Shown here piece by piece: positions 11,560-36,779 of a stretch of 49,883 nt of DNA. The notes under the pieces were generated by a model, which saw only the letters and a program-made list of their open reading frames with translations, had not been told where the DNA came from and did no database searches. Origin of the DNA: Octopus bimaculoides (taxonomy: Eukaryota). The translations under genes were made by a program, and so were the position numbers. The DNA is taken from NCBI RefSeq assembly GCF_001194135.2, contig NC_068987.1, positions 35,491,979 through 35,541,861 of the forward strand, read 5' to 3'. Positions within the stretch are counted from its first letter, which is position 1. Every line of letters begins with the position of its first letter.

Positions 11560-11900
11560 CTTTAAATAAACCTTGGATTCAATAGCACTGTGTACAAACT
11601 CCATACTTGGAATTATCAATTTTAAATACTATTGGAATTTACTCACAAGGTATTGGAATCATATGCATACCATCCTGCCTAAATAATGGATCAACAAATG
11701 CAGTATCACTGCATACCTCACAACTATTTTCATTCCTCCACTTCACTCCCTATTTCATATCTCATCTAAATTAACTATTGCTTAACCGTTTTCTCACACC
11801 GTCTCCGATGAAGGGATATAAAAAATATCCTTGAAACAGTTGTAAGACCTATTTATAAATGTCCTAAAATCTTCACAGCCTTGGTTTTTTATCTCATTCT
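11560..11900 (+). mobile_element. Penelope-like terminal repeat (same family as 7060-7470)
   Basis: Clear alignment with 7295-7465 (cacttcactc..atctaaattaactatt..tcacaccgtct..gatgaagggat..tgtaagacct..cagccttg..ttatctcatt). Carries a hammerhead fold. Confidence 0.65.
11801..11848 (+). ncRNA. Minimal type I hammerhead ribozyme (U4C core variant)
   Basis: Stem I GUCU/AGAC; core CCGAUGA; stem II AGGGAUAU/AUAUCCUU with an A5 loop; GAAAC-AGUU-GUA; predicted cleavage after 11844. Confidence 0.7.
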
Positions 11901-12224
11901 GAAAAAAAAAATTATATACATTTATATATATATATATTATAATGTTAGGGAATTTCAAAATCCAAACTTACAAGGATATTCAATTTAATAATATCAAATT
12001 GAATTATATAATGAAAAATATAGTAATAATTTAGAGAAGAACCACCAAGATGCGACTGAAACAATGAAAAAGATCAGACTCCATTAAGAAAAGCGTACTC
12101 TTCAAAATACTAATTAAAAAAACTAAACAATCCAAAAGAAAATTTATAATCCATAAAATCTATAAAATATTAGATTAAAAATCTAATTCAGTTTAGTAAA
12201 TTTATAAAAACGAAAATGAATAAT

Positions 12225-12329
12225 AGACTACGCGCGTTTCGTAGCCACATAAAAGTGGAAAAGATTTGGCCAATTTACAAAAATCGATCAAAATAAGTTC
12301 CACTCAGAATGAGGACACTCTTCAGGTCT
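12225..12329 (-). ncRNA. Type I hammerhead ribozyme with long stem II
   Basis: Minus strand: AGAC-CUGAAGA-[GUGUCCUCA..GAGUGGAA..UUCCACUU..UGUGGCUAC]-GAAAC-GCGC-GUA-GUCU. Canonical core, stem I AGAC/GUCU and palindromic ACGCGCGU stem III. Confidence 0.7.
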
Positions 12330-13153
12330 TGTAACTTCAAAAAACGTATCTTAATATTTAAAAATGCAATAAAATAAAATAGGAAAAAGTAGAAATATCT
12401 GTACGTTTAAGCAATTATTGGTTCAATATATACAGTGTCAACGTTTTATAATAACAATCATCTCTCAGCTTAGAGGCATAAATCGTCTAATGAAGAAATA
12501 CAATCTATAGATTAGAATAGGAAAACATATATAAGGATAGTGCCATTAACTAATAAACGAATTCGGATGTTCAACAGTACTAATAAAAAGAACAACATCA
12601 CTTATCTTATGGAAGATTCGTTGTTGACTGTATTATTACACAATACGCATAGAATTTACACGATATGGATCACAAATATTAAACTTTCTATGTAGGATTA
12701 AAATATGTAAAACACGTGACAATATGGCGTTACAAGGAGAAGAGGTAAGAACAACTCCTCTAAATTATTTATATATATNNNNNNNNNNNNNNNNNNNNNN
12801 NNNNNNNNNNNNNNNNNNNNNNNNNNNNNNNNNNNNNNNNNNNNNNNNNNNNNNNNNNNNNNNNNNNNNNNNNNNNNNNNNNNNNNNNNNNNNNNNNNNN
12901 NNNNNNNNNNNNNNNNNNNNNNNNNNNNNNNNNNNNNNNNNNNNNNNNNNNNNNNNNNNNNNNNNNNNNNNNNNNNNNNNNNNNNNNNNNNNNNNNNNNN
13001 NNNNNNNNNNNNNNNNNNNNNNNNNNNNNNNNNNNNNNNNNNNNNNNNNNNNNNNNNNNNNNNNNNNNNNNNNNNNNNNNNNNNNNNNNNNNNNNNNNNN
13101 NNNNNNNNNNNNNNNNNNNNNNNNNNNNNNNNNNNNNNNNNNNNNNNNNNNNN

Positions 13154-13181
13154 ATATATATATGTATATATATATATACAC

Positions 13182-13228
<47 letters not shown>

Positions 13229-13245
13229 GATATAAATATATAGCA
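13154..13245. repeat. (TA)n/(GATA)n microsatellite
   Basis: Direct simple repeats beside an N gap. Confidence 0.9.
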
Positions 13246-14759
13246 ACAGACTAAGGAAAGGAATTCCTTCAAAGGTGTGTGTAAAACATCCAATTCACTG
13301 GTACGTCATAAACATGGGCATAATGCAAATTACAGAAAATAAATCAAATAGATACAATTGAGAATCCAATAATTTACATATATATATATTATATATAACA
13401 TGATATACTATGCATATGATATAATTTGATATACGTTAACATAAAAATAACTCATTAAAAACCTAAAATGCCAACAATTTGTTTCGACTTATATACATTA
13501 TTTGATTATTAACCATAGATATAGAGTTAGCCCATTAATAATGGATATCAAAATATTACTAGTTATTTTAGAAGTAGTGCTAATGTAGGTTTGTAGCCTT
13601 GCAATACATGTTCGAAATACATATAGATGGTCCATCAAGACGGATGACCAACGGACACGGTATTGTATCATATTACCGTAGGCGACGGGAGATATATATA
13701 TATTTCTGTTAATTAGATACGGGCAAAATTGTAAATAGACATGCAGATTGGACTGACGAAATGACTGGTGGGCTGGCAGGATGGGTGGATGAATAGATAG
13801 ATGGATAGACAGACGACTGGATAAATGCTGGGTTGTTTGATTCATGGATTGAATGAGTTGCACTTACTATGCGAGAATGTGACAATTGGATGTAATTTTT
13901 CTTTTTAAAGAAATCTGAGAATATTGTTCATTGTTACATCACCTTATACGTAAAATACATAAAACCCAGGTGTCTTCGTCAAAATAAACAGAGTATAAAC
14001 CATTTCAATAAAACATCATTCATTAGAATAAATGCTAGTAAATATAACAGAAACAGTGTAGCAATAATAAACAGAAAAACATTAAGTATTCTCATTAACA
14101 GTGCTTACAGAAGAAGCACACTTGCAGATGTATGAAGGCGCAACACACAAACAGAAACACTTACAAACACACATACACACGGCTATAAATTTATTAGAGG
14201 CTGACGCTGAGTCAACCATATCAAATGCCGCAGTCTAGTAAAAAAAAAATCACACAAACACCAACGCGTATACACACACTCATAGACTCACATATACACG
14301 CTCACATTTGCCCGTACAAATGAAGACAAGACACTATTAGTAAAAGAATTTGTTATTGAAGTACATATGTGTTATCTAACTTAATTACACACCAATTTTA
14401 TTCAACATAATATATACTTCAGCTGTAGCAAATACGAATAGTGGCTACACAATGACGGTGTCTCTGTATTCATATATCATATATGTATGTCATTACTCAT
14501 TTTTTTTCAAAATTTATTGTCAATAGAGAAAGAACTGGTTTCTAACCTAGATCCAAGGTTCCCTCACTGGAATTTCAACATCAACAACAGAGTATTTTTG
14601 TTTGTATGTATGTATGTATGTATGTATGTATGTATGTATGTATGTATGTGCAGATCTGTATGTTTTATGTATGTATTTTCATGCATGTAGTTACATATCT
14701 AGTTATGCTGATATATATTTAAATGATATTCTTCTGAAAAGTTTCAAAGAGTTTTACAG

Positions 14760-17388: not shown

Positions 17389-19140
17389 CAATATACAAAT
17401 GTTTATATGTGTGTTAAGGTGACTGTGTATATCTTTCTGTCTATGTGTTTATGTGTGTATGGCTCACAAATATGTTCTATGACTAAATAAGTTTTCACCG
17501 AGCCAGTTTGTCTGCAGATAAATCTCATCTAAGTAAAAGCTCTGTGCTTTCTTAAACAATTTCACACACCTGATTTCAATTATGTATCGAAACACACATT
17601 AATTTCTCAATATATTGCCCGGTTTATTGTCAAGAGGAATTCCTGTGCTGATTAAAATCATTAATTATCTGATAAGTATATAAAATAATGACTTAGAGTA
17701 GTTTATAATGGAAGAAATATCAATAAGACAAAAGAAATAGTTTACCATTCAACCCGTCTTGAAGGAATAGCTTTAACTAAAAAATTTAGTATTTAATTTA
17801 AGATTTGTCTGATTGAAAGATTGCTGTCAAATGATTTCCAGAATAAGTTAATAATTACCGATTGATTTCAAAGAAGTTCAATATGTAAGTCAGTGTTAAT
17901 TGCTAAATATGTAAGTCAGAGTTAATTGGTAAATACGGAAATGGCAGTTAATGTGAAATTTAATTGTCAGGCTATTATAGTCAACTCAGCTACTAGTCAT
18001 GAAAATCTATTTTAGCTTTTCATAGCTCACAGCAATCTCTCTCTAGGAATGTTTAATATTATTGCTTAAATTTTTGCATACCGTATTTGCCGGTCTATAA
18101 GTTGTATGCTACACTCGTTATGCCATCTGTAATATGAAATTAGACGAATGTCATATTTAAAATATAAAGACCCGCATCTTAAACACCGACGTGTGAGGTA
18201 TGAGGATTAAGCATTTCAGAAGAGAAGAATTACTGTTTTACATGGCTATCATAGCAGTTGTTCGTTTTTTAATGAGTCTGTACATTTTCTCCATCTCTAA
18301 TTGAAGTGTGGAATAGAAATTCAAATATGATATAGAAAGCCCGATGTCAAATGACCTATGTCTACCAAATACCATGTTTCTGAACTTCATGCAATATATA
18401 TAACAAGAAGAAAGCATGAAGTAGACAGTCAAAATAATTCTTGTAGTTGATCTTTATATAGTGAATATGCATCAACAATATTTTCTAAAAATATGCTGAG
18501 GAGGATATGAATGACTAATAAATATATTCAGAAATCTTAATCAAAGATAGGATATTACATTTGTACTCAAAAACTATCCATGCAGTGTTGGCAAAAGCAG
18601 TGACTAAAAAGAAAGATATAATAGATTTTTTTAATGGAAGCAATTTCTTAGGACTGAAATAAAATTTGTACATAAAAACTCAAAATAAAATCCTAACAAC
18701 GTTTCTTACACTGGTATGGTCTTTGTTAAGAAACATAAAGATCTTAAATAAAAACATTCTAATGAGAAGCAGAACTCAAACACTAAAATTGTTGGCGGCA
18801 AGTCCATAAATGTTAAGTACATAGGATTCATGTCTTACGTAAAAGGTAGTACTTTAATAGTATTATATATTAATAGAACAGGGAATGATGAACGGCAAAT
18901 CAACCACGAAGGATTTTGTTCGGCGATCTAAAATCTCTGCCTATGTGTAAGATATACAAGTATAAATGATAGAAAACCACTTCATAAACTCTCAAATACA
19001 AACTAAAATGAAAAACAAAATGTTTAAATCGACAATCATGTAAGTAAAAAAAAGTAATTATTCAGTAAGCCTTAAAGCGGTTCTCTCCCCTCAAGGAGAA
19101 TATTCACCATCTGTAACCTCCCAGTAATTTTCCACCTTCT

Positions 19141-20639: not shown

Positions 20640-20818
20640 AAATAGAATATAAGGCATGGTAGAATTGCTGCAAAAGGTTTGCCTCCTTGGCACGGCCTAA
20701 ATAATCAAGAAAGTATTGGATAGCTGGAAAGAATGGATAGCATGGTACAGTAGACTGCAGTTAGCAAGCCCGCTATGCATGTAACACTCCAGGTGCTCAA
20801 AGAAAACTTGTGATAAAG

Positions 20819-20876
<58 letters not shown>

Positions 20877-20878
20877 TA
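20640..20878 (+). mobile_element. Second R4/Dong-like 3' end with (TAA)n tail
   Basis: LLQKVCLLGTA..IKKVLDS* matches the terminal QKxxLLGxAxIxRxVL motif. Pure (TAA)n at ~20821-20878. Confidence 0.7.
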
Positions 20879-21012
20879 AACGTATCTGTCAAGACCTACC
20901 AAAAACTGAGCAAATATAAAGATCTTGAAATAGAAATTAGCAAAATGTGGAATCTGAAGACGAAAACAATACCTATTGTCATAGGTGCCCTGGGAATGAC
21001 AGCGAAACGGGC
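20879..21012 (+). mobile_element. Third R4/Dong-like RLE fragment starting directly after the TAA run
   Basis: NVSVKTYQKLSKYKDLEIEISKMWNLKTKTIPIVIGALG; continues into the N gap. Confidence 0.85.
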
Positions 21013-21398
21013 NNNNNNNNNNNNNNNNNNNNNNNNNNNNNNNNNNNNNNNNNNNNNNNNNNNNNNNNNNNNNNNNNNNNNNNNNNNNNNNNNNNNNNNN
21101 NNNNNNNNNNNNNNNNNNNNNNNNNNNNNNNNNNNNNNNNNNNNNNNNNNNNNNNNNNNNNNNNNNNNNNNNNNNNNNNNNNNNNNNNNNNNNNNNNNNN
21201 NNNNNNNNNNNNNNNNNNNNNNNNNNNNNNNNNNNNNNNNNNNNNNNNNNNNNNNNNNNNNNNNNNNNNNNNNNNNNNNNNNNNNNNNNNNNNNNNNNNN
21301 NNNNNNNNNNNNNNNNNNNNNNNNNNNNNNNNNNNNNNNNNNNNNNNNNNNNNNNNNNNNNNNNNNNNNNNNNNNNNNNNNNNNNNNNNNNNNNNNTA

Positions 21399-24615: not shown

Positions 24616-25467
24616 CCAATATCTTTTCTCATGGTTGCTGAAAGGGATATGCAAAATGGGTTAATCTCACACGGGTTATGACTACGACAAATTTCTATAA
24701 CTGAAAGCTCAAAGCGTTTGCGTTATTCATTTCTTCAAAAGCTAGTTACAAATTACGTAAATGGCGTAAAAATTACATCAAAATAAACACTTTTAATAAA
24801 ATCGAATGAGATACGTTGATGTACTTGTATAATCATGTTTCGACCCTAGTCACATTTCGTAACAATTATAATTGATTTTGGTGAAACGTTGCAAACTGCT
24901 ATTTATATGTGTGTGCGTGTGTGCGTGTGTAAAAAAATATATATGTGCATTTGTTTGATTGTTACTAGTTTTAGTAATTGAACTGCTGCCATGCTGGGGC
25001 ACCGCCTTCAAGGATGTTAGTCGTACGAATCGTACTTCTATATATCACTTATTTTAAGACTGCCACGTAGTCTTTCGTTTCCTGTAGCCGAGCCGCTAAA
25101 TTACGGAGACGTATACAGATCAGAACCGGTCGTCCAGCGACGATGTGGAACAATCACACGAGAAAACATACACACAAACAAATACACGCACACGCACGCA
25201 TATACATACATACATATCTATCGCTCTTTCGCTCTTTATCTCTCTCACTCTCTTCCCTCTCTCTCTGTCCCCCTCTCTCTCCACTCTCTCTCTCTCTTCA
25301 CTTTCTCTCTCCCTCTCTCTATATACATACNNNNNNNNNNNNNNNNNNNNNNNNNNNNNNNNNNNNNNNNNNNNNNNNNNNNNNNNNNNNNNNNNNNNNN
25401 NNNNNNNNNNNNNNNNNNNNNNNGATAGATAGATAGATAGATACATAGATAGATACATAGATAGATA

Positions 25468-25613
25468 TGTGGAAAGAAATTTGCTTCCCAACCACATATT
25501 TCCGGGTTCAGCTGCACTGCGTTGCAACTTAGGCAGGTGTTCTCTACTATAGCATTGGGCCTCCCAAATTCTTGTGAATTGATTTGGTAGACGGAAACTG
25601 AAAGAAGCCAGTC

Positions 25614-25664
<51 letters not shown>

Positions 25665-27802: not shown

Positions 27803-28240
27803 CAGAAAGGTGCGGCTCTGCGAAGAATTTTGCTTCCCAACCACATTGTCTCACTACGCAGCACCTTAGGCAAGTGTCTTCTACTATAGCCACAGGTCGA
27901 CCAAAATCTTGTGAATTTAGTGAGTGTGTGTGTGTGTGTGTTTGTGTGTGTAGGAGAGAAAGAGAGAAAGAGTGTGTGTGTGTGAGAAAGAGAGAGAGAG
28001 TGTGTGTGCGCCCGCATGTGTGTAAATCTGTCAGTGAGTGAGTGTGCGTGCGTGTGCATTTGTGTGTGTATTTGTGTGTGTCTTTGAGTATGTGTTCTTT
28101 CCCATAACTTACTCGCATAGGGGACAGATAGGTTAAGTACTAGACTTTAAAAATACAAGAAGTGGGGTTGATTTCTTCGACTAAAATTAGTCAATCTGGT
28201 ACCCCAGTATGGTCGCAGTCTAATGACTGAAACGAAATAG
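27803..28240 (+). mobile_element. SINE family A, diverged copy
   Basis: ttgcttcccaaccaca..gcaccttaggcaagtgtcttctactatagcc..gaccaaa, a TG/GA spacer, and a 3' cagtctaatgactgaaac end. Confidence 0.8.
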
Positions 28241-33199: not shown

Positions 33200-33366
33200 T
33201 ATATGTATATACGTACATATATATACGATACACTTCTTTCTCTTTCCGCCTACCAAATCCACTCACAGGGCTTTGGTCAGTTCGAGGTGATAGTAGCAGA
33301 CATCAGCCCAAGGTTCCACGCAATGAGACTGAACCCGGAGGCATGTGGTAGCTAAGCATGCTACTT
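33200..33366 (-). mobile_element. SINE family A body resuming after the inserted element (includes the 3' TSD copy)
   Basis: Minus strand: gtagcatgcttagctaccacatgcctccgggttcagtctcattgcgtggaaccttggg..gaccaaagccctgtgagtggatttggtag aligns with 44683-44800. Confidence 0.85.
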
Positions 33367-35674
33367 TATTCTATTTTATTTGCTATAGAAGCAGTATACA
33401 CAGTAGCTGCGGGTTAGACAAACACATTAATGAATGAAAATGAAATAAAATGAATAGATGAGAGACGAAACCCAACACCCGCTGATTGGATTTTTCTCGA
33501 AAACATATATTTTTTTTTAAATCAAAATAAGTTTTCAAACCTCTTCCAAAAAGGAGGCAAAAACCTCTTACTTAACATGTTTTTTAAAAATAAAACACAC
33601 AATTGATGTTAAACCACTAAATTCAATATGATGAGGTTTCAAACACTCTTAGTATTTAATACTAACGAGGCTTTTTCACCTCCTACTCCTCAATATATCC
33701 ATCAATATATCCATGATTATCTTCATTGTCGCTTATGATCCCGTACCCCGTTTCCCATGTCTCATTCATGTACAAAGCATGTCATGTTAGGGTCACTCGG
33801 CCATATGCGACATTCCTCTTTCAGTCTTTTCAGCTTTTTCCCACACGGAAAACCCTATGACCTCCACAGCTATCTGCGGAGGCCATTCGGAATCCGTGTG
33901 CAGGCCATATCTACTGTTTCTTTATGTTCCTCCACTATGTTTTCCACCTCCCCTCCTTTGTAGAAGAAGACAAGTAAATCTTCATCTTTAAGGGTGGGGA
34001 TCGTTTCTTCCACCATCGGTGACGCAATCCCCGCCGACGAAGGCTTTCCCCCATCGGAACATGCAGACGGCACATCATCGTCTACATGCAATGACCCGTT
34101 CTTCTTTCTTTCTTTTCTTTTCTTTTCTTCCTGACTTCGGGAGAGTGGAGATCTCCCCCACTTCCCGAAGCCTTAGGGTCCTTCGGCGGGTAACTATTGT
34201 TGCTCGATTTCTTCCTTTTAAATCCCTTTTGGTTTGAGGAGGCGGAAGCTTCCTCAACAACATCCTCCACTCCCTTTGAATGAGTAGGTGAGGTAGCTTC
34301 CAGTAACTGTTCCAGGACCTTACCATGGTCCTGGGTCAGTTCTTTTTGATTTGGCCTAGCTCCAGGCACGAGTGACACTTGGGGGCGTCCCTCAAGTGTC
34401 ACCGGATACCTGCAGCAAGCCATTTAAAAAAAATCTGGAAAAATCACACCTGTTGCGGCCGATGGGTTCCACAGGGTCGAAATCGCTTTTAACCCTATCC
34501 AATCGACCGACGGCAATATCCTTACATTTAAAAGTCTGTACCGCTATCCCCCAGGTTCGTCGGATGTTATCTTCAATCTTACCCTCCTTGGTGCTTGGAG
34601 GTAACCAACATACCCAGGCTCTTATTAATTTCCTTCCGCAGTACGACGAGAGGAACGGAATTTCATTGCCTTCTAAGGGTTGGCTCGCGACATTGCGAGC
34701 CTTCTCCAGGGTGTCAAGCAGCAACTATACCGTTGCATGATTGACACCACGAGATATGTATTTCACAGAGGACAAATAGTCTTTCAATTCTTTTTCTATA
34801 TTTAGTTTTGAGAATAAGGTGATGGCATCACGAACTTTAGAGTAAGCTGTAACCAATACCATCCTCTCCTCCATGTCTTTTAACCACTGCTTGGGTGGGA
34901 TAATTTCCCACTCCAAGACAGGGGTTCTTCTTTTTAAGTTCCTTCACTAATATGTCCAAAAAAAAACCCAGTTCAAAAACAGTTCACAAAAACAGTCCAC
35001 CAAAAATTCAAACCGAATAATAATAGAAAACAAAATGAAGGAGAAGGGAAATAAACTGAAAAAAATAAGAAGAAAAAGAAAAGGGAACCGAAATTTAGAA
35101 AGAAGGAAAAAATGGGAGAAATGAAAAATAAAAAAAGAATAATGCACACAAATAGAACAGACAGGGAATCCTTGGCTCTGTATAATACTCTAACCAGGTA
35201 AATCAAATAGTCTGGCTTCTTCTTGATTGTACTCCAGTTAGGTAAACACCACAGGGTAAACCCCAAAGGGAATAACTTTTTCTGGTGAAATACGCCCACC
35301 AGAATGTACAAGTTATTTGGCGAAAAAAAGGCACACAGAATTTTATTCAAAGAAAGTTTTCAAAAAATTCTCAGTCAACCGTCATGGCGACGAGAACACA
35401 CCCACCAATAACGACGAACGAGGAACACAATATTTGTGCTCGTTAAAGAGAGCAACAATTTAAAGTCTCCAAGAGCAGACAAAATTGCCCCAGAGCTAGG
35501 CAGACATTTACTGAAAAAAGAAAACACAATAAATTCCCACCCAGCTCAAAAGACAAACAAAAAACTATCTATCTTGACGACTTCCTTTTGGTTCTTTTCT
35601 TCCTATTCCTGGAGCCAATGGTCACGTCTTCTCTCCCTGGAAGCAACAGAGCAACTAATGACGCATGCGCCGAA
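33367..35674 (-). mobile_element. ~2.3 kb ORF1-only non-LTR element (L1/Tx1-like) bounded by a TSD inside SINE A
   Basis: 5' end (ttcg)gcgcatgcgtca, long T-rich 5' UTR, decayed ORF1, 3' region ending aataaaatagaataaa. Flanks are ctaagcatgctactt (33352-33366) and gtaagctagctactt (35675-35689). No EN/RT motifs seen. Confidence 0.8.
33870..34940 (-). pseudogene. ORF1 nucleic-acid-binding protein remnant with CCHC-type knuckle
   Basis: 34392-34916 is one frame with few stops. VTLEGRP/PKCHSCLELGQIKKN*P (34336-34377) has knuckle spacing Cx2Cx4(H>Q)x4(C>stop). Lys/Arg-rich low-complexity C-terminus. Confidence 0.75.
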
Positions 35675-35711
35675 GTAAGCTAGCTACTTACCACGCAGAC
35701 ATACTTGCGCA
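35675..35711 (-). mobile_element. SINE family A 5' head (A-box half) upstream of the inserted element
   Basis: Minus strand gcgcaagtatgtctgcgtggtaagtagctagcttac aligns without gaps to gcgcaggagtggctatgtggtaagcagcttgcttac (44661-44696). Confidence 0.85.
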
Positions 35712-36779
35712 TATACATATATATAAGCTTTTTATTCTTTATATGTATGTATATATGTATATACATACATATAAAGAATGAAAAGCTTTGAATGGTACAA
35801 CAATGCACTATAATACAAAAATGGACTATATACTTGTTGTAATTTAGTTATCCATAGTCCGATGATATTTCGGAATACAATTCCTTCTTCAGATCTTCTT
35901 AGATGGAGTCTCTGCTATAAAGTGTTTACTAATGGCTTTTCTTTTTTTTTCTGGAAGTGTCGCAGTAGTGGTCTCACGAAGCCCCTTCCGGAATTCCTCA
36001 TGAGAAGTGTGTGAGGTCGGCTGTTTCAATCTCGTGTGTGTTGGTATAAATAACCGACAATGTTTCAAGCGAACTACAATACTCTCTTATATGTATATAT
36101 ATATATATATATGAATATATATATACATATATANNNNNNNNNNNNNNNNNNNNNNNNNNNNNNNNNTATATATATATATATATATATATTTGCATATGCG
36201 CACATACCTTTTTCTGCACATATGCTTGTATATAGGACAAGCCTGCTTTCATTCAGATGTATTTAAGCAGAGCTCTCTGCAGCAAAACACATCAAATAAC
36301 ACAGCCGTAACTATTTTCTCAGTGTCATTATAGATAAAAATATAACAGCATCTTTTACATTCAATCTCTCGATTATTAATGATATTACATAATTGGTAGT
36401 TATTGATATAATCAGTAATATTTCGAGTTTTTACAATTTTGTGACTTAATCTCGCATTACGTGTCTGGTTTTTACTTACAAAACTCACTTTACGCATCAA
36501 TGATTTCAATGATCGTTTATGTTCTGTGGAAATGATTTAACAGCTTGTCGTCTCTTTGACAAGACGGAATTACTCCCATTATCAAATGTTTTGTCCGTTC
36601 TTCCGTTCGTTCTTTCGACAATTGTCTTAGCCACATCACAATTATCTGAAAATTGGCACGCTTTGAGTATATACTTTTGGGGACCTGAAAAGATAAAGCT
36701 TTGATAAGTATCGGAGGAAATTATAATAAGCAATATTTCAGAGTAATGGGACAGTTGGCAGAGCTCATGGTCTCTTTTG

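What the first reader, a model, noticed from the sequence alone, without database searches (positions are those of the whole stretch)
33200..35711. Non-LTR element inserted into the tRNA-like head of a SINE with a ~14-15 bp target-site duplication: candidate SINE/tRNA-targeting retrotransposon
Seen: on the minus strand a SINE head (gcgcaag..gcgtggtaagtagctagcttac) stops, a 2.3-kb ORF1-bearing element follows, and after aataaaatagaataaa the SINE resumes as gtagcatgcttagctaccacatgcctccgggttcag. The flanks gtaagctagctactt (35675-35689) and ctaagcatgctactt (33352-33366) match at 12 of 15 positions. The intact site is visible at 44660-44720. The insertion separates the SINE A box from its B box. 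Known: Tx1-clade L1-group elements are often sequence-specific for multicopy RNA genes, microsatellites or other transposons, and target-primed reverse transcription leaves TSDs of this size. Inference: a lineage that uses an abundant SINE (or its parent tRNA sequence) as a safe-harbour target and disables the SINE promoter as it inserts. The clade call is tentative because ORF2 is absent.
Basis: partly seen in the sequence, partly recalled or inferred. Interest (0 to 1): 0.85.

Follow-up and report, generated by a model that had tools for sequence, protein, structure and literature searches.

The report
ORF1-only retroelement inside an octopus SINE
A decayed 2.3-kb retrotransposon that carries only a gag-like ORF1 sits inside the head of an octopus-type SINE with a 15-bp target duplication, and a second, independent copy in Octopus sinensis joins the same SINE head at the same position, so the family may aim at this SINE, though two copies cannot prove it.

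Summary
On the minus strand a SINE head (35710-35675) is followed by a 2308-bp insert (35674-33367). The SINE then resumes at 33366, repeating 15 SINE bases (12/15 identical). No assembly gap lies in the region, and the insert has no LTRs or terminal inverted repeats.

The "ORF1" is a pseudogene with 3 frameshifts and 4 stops. Its only relative among 1.8 billion representative proteins is an intact 281-aa protein of Octopus sinensis (LOC115225585; 55% aa identity; dN/dS 0.22). That protein has a weak CCHC knuckle and a basic tail. No endonuclease or reverse transcriptase is present in either copy, so the Tx1/L1 clade call cannot be tested.

New evidence: the O. sinensis copy lies in unrelated flanks, yet it too is preceded by the 36-37-nt SINE head, ending within one base of the same SINE position. 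A chance nested insertion is therefore unlikely.

Two readings remain:
- Site-preferring insertion into the SINE hairpin (favoured, about 0.55).
- The SINE head has become part of the element's own 5' end (about 0.2).

The O. sinensis copy has lost its 3' end, so only one 3' junction exists. A genome-wide census of flanks is needed and could not be run. This would be a new member of a known kind (target-specific non-LTR elements). Moderate interest.

The parts
35675..35710 (-). SINE head (5' part of the host SINE, with an A-box-like TGTCTGCGTGG); 28/36 identical to the intact copy at 44661-44696
35675..35689 (-). Upstream copy of the 15-bp target-site duplication, AAGTAGCTAGCTTAC (SINE positions about 23-37; one arm plus loop of the SINE hairpin)
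33367..35674 (-). Inserted 2308-bp element: about 735-nt 5' UTR, decayed ORF1, about 740-nt 3' region, A-rich end. No ORF2, LTR or TIR
35650..35674 (-). Conserved 5' terminus of the element (TTCGGCGCATGCGTCATTAGTTGCT). The GCATGCGT.ATTAGTTGCT core is shared with the O. sinensis copy, while the rest of the 5' UTR is unalignable
34109..34940 (-). ORF1 pseudogene: 55% aa identity to P0002 (LOC115225585, O. sinensis), 3 frameshifts and 4 stops, degenerate CCHC knuckle (KCHSCLELGQIKKN*) at about 34377-34336, basic tail
33950..33987 (-). Short segment after ORF1 still shared with the O. sinensis copy (DLLVFFYKGGE / DLVIFFHKGGA); last point of homology between the two copies
33367..33381 (-). A-rich 3' end AAATAAAATAGAATA, compatible with a short decayed poly(A) tail
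33352..33366 (-). Downstream copy of the target-site duplication, AAGTAGCATGCTTAG
33223..33366 (-). Resumed SINE body (B-box-like GGTTCAGTCTC; 77% to the intact copy), followed by its TA/TG microsatellite tail down to about 33055
44658..44835 (+). Uninterrupted copy of the same SINE family, showing the empty target GGTAAGCAGCTTGCTTACC (hairpin)

Best explanation
The insert is an old, dead copy of a non-autonomous, ORF1-only ('half-LINE', HAL1-like) non-LTR retroelement family of Octopus. It entered by target-primed reverse transcription.

Inferred mechanism:
1. The antisense strand of a resident SINE was nicked at 5'-...CTACTT|ACCAC-3', between SINE positions 22 and 23.
2. The A-rich 3' end of the element RNA was primed there.
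3. The sense strand was cut 15 nt further on, after ...GCTTAC. Repair duplicated the 15 bp that form most of the hairpin in the SINE head.

An independent copy from a distant sub-lineage in O. sinensis joins the same SINE head within one base of the same point. The family, or the unidentified autonomous partner that supplies endonuclease and RT, therefore most likely prefers this SINE site. This resembles Tx1-clade elements that target other transposons.

Shown: the insertion, the TSD, the absence of ORF2, the family relationship, purifying selection on ORF1, and the shared 5' junction. Inferred: the retrotransposition mechanism, the nick positions, trans-mobilisation, and the site preference.
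For: - TSD and SINE continuity. The two 15-mers match at 12/15 and both map to the same SINE positions. Only 4 of 93,426 window 15-mers match as well.
- Element type: no LTR or TIR; the element ends A-rich.
- Family: the only relative among 1.8e9 representatives is the intact 281-aa LOC115225585 of O. sinensis. It shares 55% aa and 66% nt identity, with dN/dS 0.22 at dS about 1.3. The ORF therefore evolved as a functional gene while the two lineages split, and the two copies are not a dead duplicated segment.
- Shared junction: the O. sinensis copy has GGCTGAGGCATGGCTGTGTGGTAAGTAGCTTGCTTCC directly before TGTGCATGCGTTGATTAGTTGCT (L001 9453-9512). The sequence upstream of the head is unrelated to the window's.
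- The window's 3' flank argues against the head being part of the element. If it were, a 3' flank that is a SINE body starting at the matching position and orientation would be a coincidence of roughly 3e-4 to 2e-3 (SINE fraction about 4% from PMC12988792).
- Head divergence: the two element-linked heads are no closer to each other (28/36) than to an unrelated SINE copy (28/36 and 29/36), as expected for independent SINE copies.
- Age is coherent: 3/15 TSD differences imply about 10% decay per copy. Simulating 10% decay gives 3.6 +/- 1.8 stops against 4 observed.
- Known precedent: non-LTR elements that target transposons or tRNA genes are described in PMC4494074 and PMC4640811. ORF1-only HAL1 is described in PMC5753468.
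Against: - Only two copies could be obtained, and only one has a 3' junction.
- The O. sinensis copy breaks off at L001 10975, exactly where another repeat begins. No SINE body lies within the 10 kb downstream. That copy therefore fits 'head is part of the element' equally well.
- No RT or endonuclease was found in either copy, so even the non-LTR assignment is indirect.
- ORF1 matches Pfam only weakly (zf-CCHC, E 0.058, below the cut-off). It has no PDB relative, and the AlphaFold model is unusable (pLDDT 38.7).
- The nick site CTT|AC also fits an unspecific L1-like endonuclease.
- The window is a gap-rich short-read-style scaffold.
Confidence: 0.55

Rival explanations
1. The 36-nt SINE head is part of the element itself. 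An ancestral master copy sat in a SINE, and its transcripts have since carried the head as their 5' end (5' transduction, or co-transcription with the target, as proposed for the origin of SINEU heads from Tx1 targets). On this reading the family inserts anywhere, and the window's downstream SINE body is a coincidence or the result of homology-assisted 5' joining.
For: - Both copies start with the head at SINE position 1-2. The head plus the first 25 nt is the only alignable part of the 5' UTR.
- The O. sinensis copy has no SINE body within 10 kb, and the head is the only SINE-like sequence in that 20.8-kb locus.
- Co-transcription of target sequence is documented for target-specific elements (PMC4494074).
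Against: - It requires the window's 3' flank to be a SINE starting at the matching position and orientation by chance, about 3e-4 to 2e-3.
- No TSD exists between the sequence upstream of the head and the sequence downstream of the element.
- The two heads share no extra similarity beyond that to an unrelated SINE copy (28/36 against 28-29/36). Neutral sequence in the two lineages has diverged beyond alignment (dS about 1.3).
- Pol III started in the head would stop at the T6 run 111 nt into the element.
Confidence: 0.2
2. The insert is a processed pseudogene (retrocopy) of a cellular single-exon gene of the LOC115225585 type, inserted by some LINE machinery. It is not a transposable-element family with its own behaviour.
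For: - The only relative is annotated as a protein-coding gene, with an intact ORF under purifying selection.
- The insert has an A-rich end and a TSD.
- There is no RT.
Against: - The O. sinensis 'gene' is itself intronless and lies within the span of a gene model whose locus carries a C2H2 zinc-finger ORF. It is preceded by the SINE head and broken at its 3' side by other repeats. That is the look of a TE copy.
- A retrocopy would not carry the same SINE head at the same junction.
- CCHC knuckle plus basic tail is a gag/ORF1-like make-up.
Confidence: 0.08
3. An ordinary random nested insertion, and the similarity of the O. sinensis junction is accidental. SINEs are common in octopus genomes, so some LINE-type insertions land in them by chance.
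For: - SINEs make up about 4% of the O. bimaculoides genome (PMC12988792).
- The nick site CTT|AC resembles loose L1-type sites.
Against: A second independent copy has the same 36-37-nt SINE head ending within one base of the same position and in the same orientation. The chance is of the order of 1e-3 or less.
Confidence: 0.04
4. An assembly chimera: the SINE halves and the element were joined wrongly in a repeat-rich, gap-rich scaffold.
For: The window has 13 N-gaps and abundant microsatellites.
Against: - There is no gap between 31634 and 36133.
- The two TSD copies differ at 3 positions, so they are not a collapsed identical k-mer.
- The head-to-element junction is independently seen in the O. 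sinensis assembly.
Confidence: 0.03

Closest known systems
Tx1-clade target-specific non-LTR retrotransposons (Tx1L into the Tx1D piggyBac element; Tx1-Mar into Mariner-N4_AMi; Keno into U2 snRNA genes) - PMC4494074
   Same: A retroelement found repeatedly at one position of another multicopy element, in one orientation, flanked by target sequence. The logic is that of a safe harbour in repeated DNA.
   Different: No APE endonuclease or RT is present here, so clade membership cannot be tested. The target would be a SINE head, which I did not find reported. Only two copies were seen.
tRNA-gene-specific non-LTR elements (NeSL-1_TV in tRNA-Pro; LIN15_SM and LIN25_SM in tRNA-Arg/Glu) and Dada DNA transposons - PMC4640811, PMC8869645
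   Same: Insertion inside a Pol III-type tRNA-like sequence, between the A and B boxes.
   Different: Those elements encode a restriction-like endonuclease (NeSL/LIN) or a DDE transposase with 6-7-bp TSDs (Dada; TSD size from my own knowledge). They hit real tRNA genes. Here the target is a SINE that ARAGORN and Rfam do not score as a tRNA, and the TSD is 15 bp.
HAL1 (half-L1), the ORF1-only non-autonomous derivative of mammalian L1 - PMC5753468
   Same: The element consists of a 5' UTR, an ORF1 under selection, a 3' region and an A-rich end, without ORF2. It is presumably mobilised in trans.
   Different: There is no sequence relationship to L1 ORF1 (no Pfam or PDB hit). The autonomous partner is unknown. 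HAL1 is not site-specific.
SINEU / 5'-transducing retroelements (target or flank sequence carried as a new 5' head) - PMC4494074
   Same: A piece of a small-RNA-like sequence sits at the 5' end of LINE-derived sequence in several copies.
   Different: In the window the rest of the SINE follows the element with a TSD. That is the signature of insertion into the SINE, not of a carried head.

Membership tests
Non-LTR (LINE-type) retrotransposon | Encodes a reverse transcriptase, usually with an APE or restriction-like endonuclease (ORF2) | tested here: not met
   Pfam found nothing in any of the three frames of the 750 nt after ORF1. No long ORF lies in the insert. The O. sinensis locus has no RT-like ORF of at least 90 aa within 10 kb. 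The copy is at best a non-autonomous derivative.
Non-LTR (LINE-type) retrotransposon | Insertion by TPRT: TSD of variable length (often 10-20 bp), no LTR or TIR, A-rich or simple-repeat 3' end | tested here: met
   There is a 15-bp TSD, 12/15 identical. No terminal direct or inverted repeats occur apart from flanking microsatellite. The 3' end is AAATAAAATAGAATA. The A-rich end alone is weak evidence.
Non-LTR (LINE-type) retrotransposon | ORF1 of a recognised type (RRM and/or CCHC knuckle, nucleic-acid-binding basic region) | tested here: inconclusive
   The CCHC pattern is visible by eye in both copies, each with one residue lost, and there is a basic tail. Pfam zf-CCHC scores E 0.058, below the cut-off. 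There is no PDB relative. The AF2 model has pLDDT 38.7 and is unusable.
Tx1 clade (L1 group) | RT/APE phylogenetic placement within Tx1 | not testable with these tools
   There is no ORF2 in either copy, and no partner element could be retrieved.
Target-specific non-LTR elements (any clade) | Most copies flanked on both sides by the same target sequence at the same position and orientation | tested here: inconclusive
   Two of two 5' junctions lie at SINE position 36-37. One of one readable 3' junction lies at SINE position 23. The second copy's 3' end is lost. The source genome could not be searched.
HAL1-like ORF1-only non-autonomous element | Complete ends with ORF1 but no ORF2, in several copies; ORF1 under purifying selection | tested here: met
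   The window copy has both ends and no ORF2. dN/dS is 0.22 between the two copies. Whether ORF2 was lost after insertion cannot be excluded from a single complete copy.
HAL1-like ORF1-only non-autonomous element | Derivation from an identifiable autonomous LINE that shares the 5' and 3' ends | not testable with these tools
   No related protein other than P0002 is in the databases. No genome search was available.
tRNA-derived SINE (SINE2) as host | Internal Pol III A and B boxes in a tRNA-like head | tested here: met
   The intact copy has A box TGGCTATGTGG (1 mismatch to TRGCNNAGTGG) and B box GGTTCAGACCC (2 mismatches to GGTTCGANNCC).
tRNA-derived SINE (SINE2) as host | Head recognisable as a tRNA | tested here: not met
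   ARAGORN found no tRNA and Rfam found no family in the whole window. 'tRNA-like' rests on the boxes only.

The most novel reading that the evidence does not exclude
An Octopus lineage of non-LTR elements is strictly specific for the hairpin GGTAAGYAGCTTGCTTACC in the head of the genus's dominant SINE. It comprises an ORF1-only form plus an as yet unseen autonomous partner with a sequence- or structure-specific endonuclease. It would be the first LINE-type family whose dedicated target is a SINE. It would exploit a target that is several per cent of the genome, and might read a DNA hairpin rather than a linear motif.
Probability: 0.35. Interest if true: 0.65.

Novelty: new member of a known kind. 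Interest (0 to 1): 0.45.

Why it matters
Target-specific retroelements usually aim at rRNA, snRNA or tRNA genes, microsatellites, telomeres or a DNA transposon. A family aimed at a SINE would add a new kind of parasite-on-parasite relationship. Octopus genome evolution has been tied to SINE expansion, so the case would sit in a genome of particular interest.

Such a family would also give a natural example of an endonuclease that recognises a short hairpin-forming site, useful for studying how APE-type or other LINE endonucleases acquire specificity. An ORF1-only family kept under purifying selection would in addition be an invertebrate parallel to mammalian HAL1.

If the alternative is true and the head is carried by the element, it is a smaller curiosity about 5' transduction.

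Tried and rejected
- Pfam on my first conceptual ORF1 and on a 73-aa ORF found nothing. The word-indexed protein search with that translation also found nothing. The translation later proved to be partly in the wrong frame.
- Rfam and ARAGORN on the whole window found nothing.
- There is no second copy of the insert in the window.
- Two further protein searches, with P0002 alone and with a two-sequence profile, returned only P0002. No more loci could be fetched.
- An exact-protein look-up of a window ORF, meant to find another assembly of this locus, found nothing on record.
- A metagenome scan for the conserved element start GCATGCGTNATTAGTTGCT gave 7 hits. None has a SINE head upstream, so all are chance.
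- AlphaFold on P0002 without an alignment gave pLDDT 38.7, so no fold search was run. A PDB sequence search gave only noise.
- I tested whether SINE similarity continues into the element beyond GCTTAC (a shared GCTTCCAGG caught my eye). It is not significant, p 0.3-0.9.
- I looked in the O. sinensis locus for a SINE tail remnant, for the SINE's own TSD, and for the missing 3' part of the element or a SINE body further downstream. Nothing was significant.
- Searching papers for the SINE sequence itself gave no hits. The Albertin 2015 genome paper was not held under the id I tried.
- A DNA-transposon or LTR origin of the insert was rejected: there are no TIRs or LTRs, and a 15-bp TSD is too long.
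Full report
**What is in the sequence**

The window is an AT-rich scaffold with 13 N-gaps, and microsatellites flank the SINE copies and the studied locus. It carries copies of a roughly 180-nt SINE whose head has Pol III A- and B-box-like motifs. The SINE's tail runs into TA/TG microsatellite. There is an intact copy at 44658-44835, a partial copy at 25466-25621 and a fragment at 27860-27905.

The finding region reads as follows on the minus strand:
- SINE head, 35710-35675, ending ...GGTAAGTAGCTAGCTTAC.
- 2308 bp of unrelated sequence, 35674-33367, ending AAATAAAATAGAATA.
- The SINE again from AAGTAGCATGCTTAGCTACCACATGCC..., 33366 down to about 33223, then its microsatellite tail.

The head stops at SINE position about 37 and the body restarts at position about 23, so 15 SINE bases are present twice. 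The two copies match each other at 12/15, and match the intact SINE at 13/15 and 12/15. Only 4 of the 93,426 15-mers in the window come that close to the first copy.

No assembly gap lies between 31634 and 36133. The insert has no terminal direct or inverted repeats other than flanking microsatellite. SINE similarity does not continue into the insert (p 0.3-0.9 against shuffles). The duplicated stretch is most of an 8-9-bp hairpin, TGGTAAGYAGCTTGCTTACCA, in the SINE head.

**What the insert is**

No frame of the insert is open for more than 125 codons. Pfam and a first protein search found nothing.

An exhaustive phmmer search with the longest ORF piece (window 34395-34721, minus strand) against 1.8 billion representative proteins gave one genuine hit. 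This is P0002, a 281-aa protein named 'uncharacterized protein LOC115225585 [Octopus sinensis]'. The other two hits are bacterial repeat proteins that match only short stretches.

Threading the window copy on P0002 shows a complete but dead ORF1 at about 34940-34109. It shares 55% amino-acid identity and has three frameshifts and four in-frame stops. Both copies have a C-x2-C-x4-H-x4-C knuckle with one residue lost in each, followed by a basic tail. Pfam zf-CCHC scores only E 0.058. There is no PDB relative, and a single-sequence AlphaFold model is too poor to use.

Between the two copies dN/dS is 0.22 at a near-saturated dS of about 1.3. The ORF therefore coded for a working protein while the two lineages diverged. 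That is what an active element family looks like, and it is not what a duplicated dead segment looks like.

Neither copy has an endonuclease or reverse transcriptase:
- Nothing matches in the three frames of the 750 nt after ORF1 in the window.
- No RT-like ORF lies within 10 kb in the O. sinensis locus.

The window copy has both of its ends, so it is an ORF1-only element. This is the architecture known from mammalian HAL1 (PMC5753468). The non-LTR assignment rests on the TSD, the A-rich end, the lack of LTR or TIR, and the gag/ORF1-like protein. It does not rest on an RT.

**The new evidence: a second copy at the same SINE position**

The O. sinensis locus is L001 (CM016886.1). It aligns to the window element over three blocks:
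- About 130 nt upstream of ORF1, through ORF1, to about 50 nt past its stop (66% identity).
- A short stretch about 90-125 nt after ORF1's stop.
- A 67-nt block spanning the 5' junction.

At that junction L001 reads ...ttccattatag | GGCTGAGGCATGGCTGTGTGGTAAGTAGCTTGCTTCC | TGTGCATGCGTTGATTAGTTGCT... (9453-9512). This is the same 36-37-nt SINE head, ending within one base of the same SINE position. It is followed by the same conserved element start, GCATGCGT.ATTAGTTGCT. The sequence upstream of the head is unrelated to the window's.

This rules out the dull explanation of a random nested insertion. SINEs are about 4% of the O. bimaculoides genome (PMC12988792). Hitting the same 10-nt stretch in the same orientation by chance is of the order of 1e-3.

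**Two readings of the link**

H1: the family inserts preferentially at this SINE site.
H2: the SINE head has become the element's own 5' end, by 5' transduction or co-transcription with a former target. That process is discussed for Tx1 elements and SINEU (PMC4494074).

The window copy discriminates between them. Its 3' flank is the rest of the SINE, in register, with a 15-bp duplication. Under H2 that is a coincidence of about 3e-4 to 2e-3.

The L001 copy does not discriminate:
- Its homology to the window element ends at 10975.
- Another roughly 220-nt repeat begins exactly there (10976-11195, repeated at 17873-18081).
- A small LTR element follows at 11503-14067.
- Neither the missing 3' part nor any SINE body is found in the remaining 10 kb.

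Two weaker points favour H1:
- The two element-linked heads are no more alike (28/36) than either is to an unrelated SINE copy (28/36 and 29/36). Meanwhile most of the 5' UTR between the conserved start and the ~130 nt before ORF1 has diverged beyond alignment.
- Pol III started in the head would terminate at a T6 run 111 nt into the element. The head is therefore unlikely to serve as the element's promoter.

I put H1 at about 0.55 and H2 at about 0.2. A retrocopy of a cellular gene is about 0.08, pure chance about 0.04, and an assembly artefact about 0.03.

**Mechanism (inferred)**

The structure fits target-primed reverse transcription:
1. The first nick falls on the antisense strand at 5'-CTACTT|ACCAC-3'.
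2. The A-rich RNA end is primed there. The boundary is ambiguous by two A's, as is usual for this kind of priming.
3. The second nick falls on the sense strand 15 nt downstream, after GCTTAC.

The two nicks lie near the base of the two arms of the SINE hairpin, about two bases away from perfect symmetry. Whether a hairpin or a linear motif is recognised cannot be said.

The conserved GCATGCG at the element's start resembles an NRF1-type half-site and could belong to an internal Pol II promoter. This is speculation from my own knowledge of the motif.

**Age**

Three differences in 15 between the TSD copies imply about 10% decay per copy. Simulating 10% random substitution on the intact O. sinensis CDS gives 3.6 +/- 1.8 stops, against 4 observed. 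This is an old insertion.

**Comparison with known systems**

[quoted passage not shown] Within the Tx1 clade, known targets include a piggyBac derivative, a mariner derivative and LTR elements (PMC4494074). A SINE as dedicated target was not found in my literature searches, but it would be the same strategy with a new target.

Membership in Tx1, or in any other clade, is untestable without ORF2. The window has no tRNA gene, and the SINE head is not scored as a tRNA by ARAGORN or Rfam.

**Verdict**

- Site specificity is plausible but rests on two copies.
- Novelty, if true: a new member of a known kind.
- Interest is moderate (0.45).

The decisive test is a census of flanks of all copies in Octopus genome assemblies, together with a search for the ORF2-bearing partner. 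Neither could be run with the collections available here.

Noticed in passing
window 35725-35788: A 31-nt inverted repeat, 97% complementary, with a 2-nt spacer (AAGCTTTTTATTCTTTATATGTATGTATATA / TATATACATACATATAAAGAATGAAAAGCTT). It lies directly upstream of the SINE head. Its origin is unknown; it may be a microsatellite-associated palindrome.
   Followed up: no
L001 11503-14067 (O. sinensis CM016886.1): A small LTR-type element. It has two 415-bp direct repeats, 97% identical, starting TG and ending CA, and is flanked by a CTCC duplication. The repeats carry a GCGCATGCGC plus CTTCCGG/CCGGAAGT promoter-like cluster. No long ORF lies between them.
   Followed up: partly
L001 10976-11195 and 17873-18081: Two copies (84.5% identical) of an unclassified repeat of about 220 nt that begins with a CA-rich stretch. 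The first copy starts exactly where the ORF1 element's homology to the window copy ends.
   Followed up: partly
L001 3012-4292 (+): A 426-aa open frame made of tandem C2H2 zinc fingers (HTGEKPY linkers). It is the kind of gene that is greatly expanded in octopus. The ORF1 element lies about 5 kb downstream, within the span of an annotated gene model.
   Followed up: no
window 1735-2163 (+): A 142-aa ORF containing ...LFHQNNAPAH.... This resembles the conserved motif of mariner/Tc1-type transposases (from memory). Pfam gave no hit at E <= 0.01, so it remains unconfirmed.
   Followed up: partly
window 20810-21012 (+), next to the gap at 21013-21396: The peptide ...KTYQKLSKYKDLEIEISKMWNLKTKTIPIVIGALGMTAKR, preceded by a poly-Asn run. 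It recalls the conserved C-terminal tail seen after the RT of some invertebrate retroelements (from memory). The only Pfam hit (Secretin_N_2, below the cut-off) falls on residues 6-48, mostly the poly-Asn run, and looks like a low-complexity artefact.
   Followed up: partly
window 33950-33987 (-) and L001 10933-10969: A short stretch after ORF1 is conserved at the peptide level in another frame (DLLVFFYKGGEV against DLVIFFHKGGAV). It could be the start of a lost second ORF or a conserved RNA element. It has no Pfam match.
   Followed up: partly
(tool behaviour): The word-indexed protein search did not return P0002 for a 278-aa query that shares PPKQWLKD, SQPLEG and RAWVC with it. The exhaustive phmmer search did find it. 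Negative results from the indexed search should therefore be read with care.
   Followed up: no
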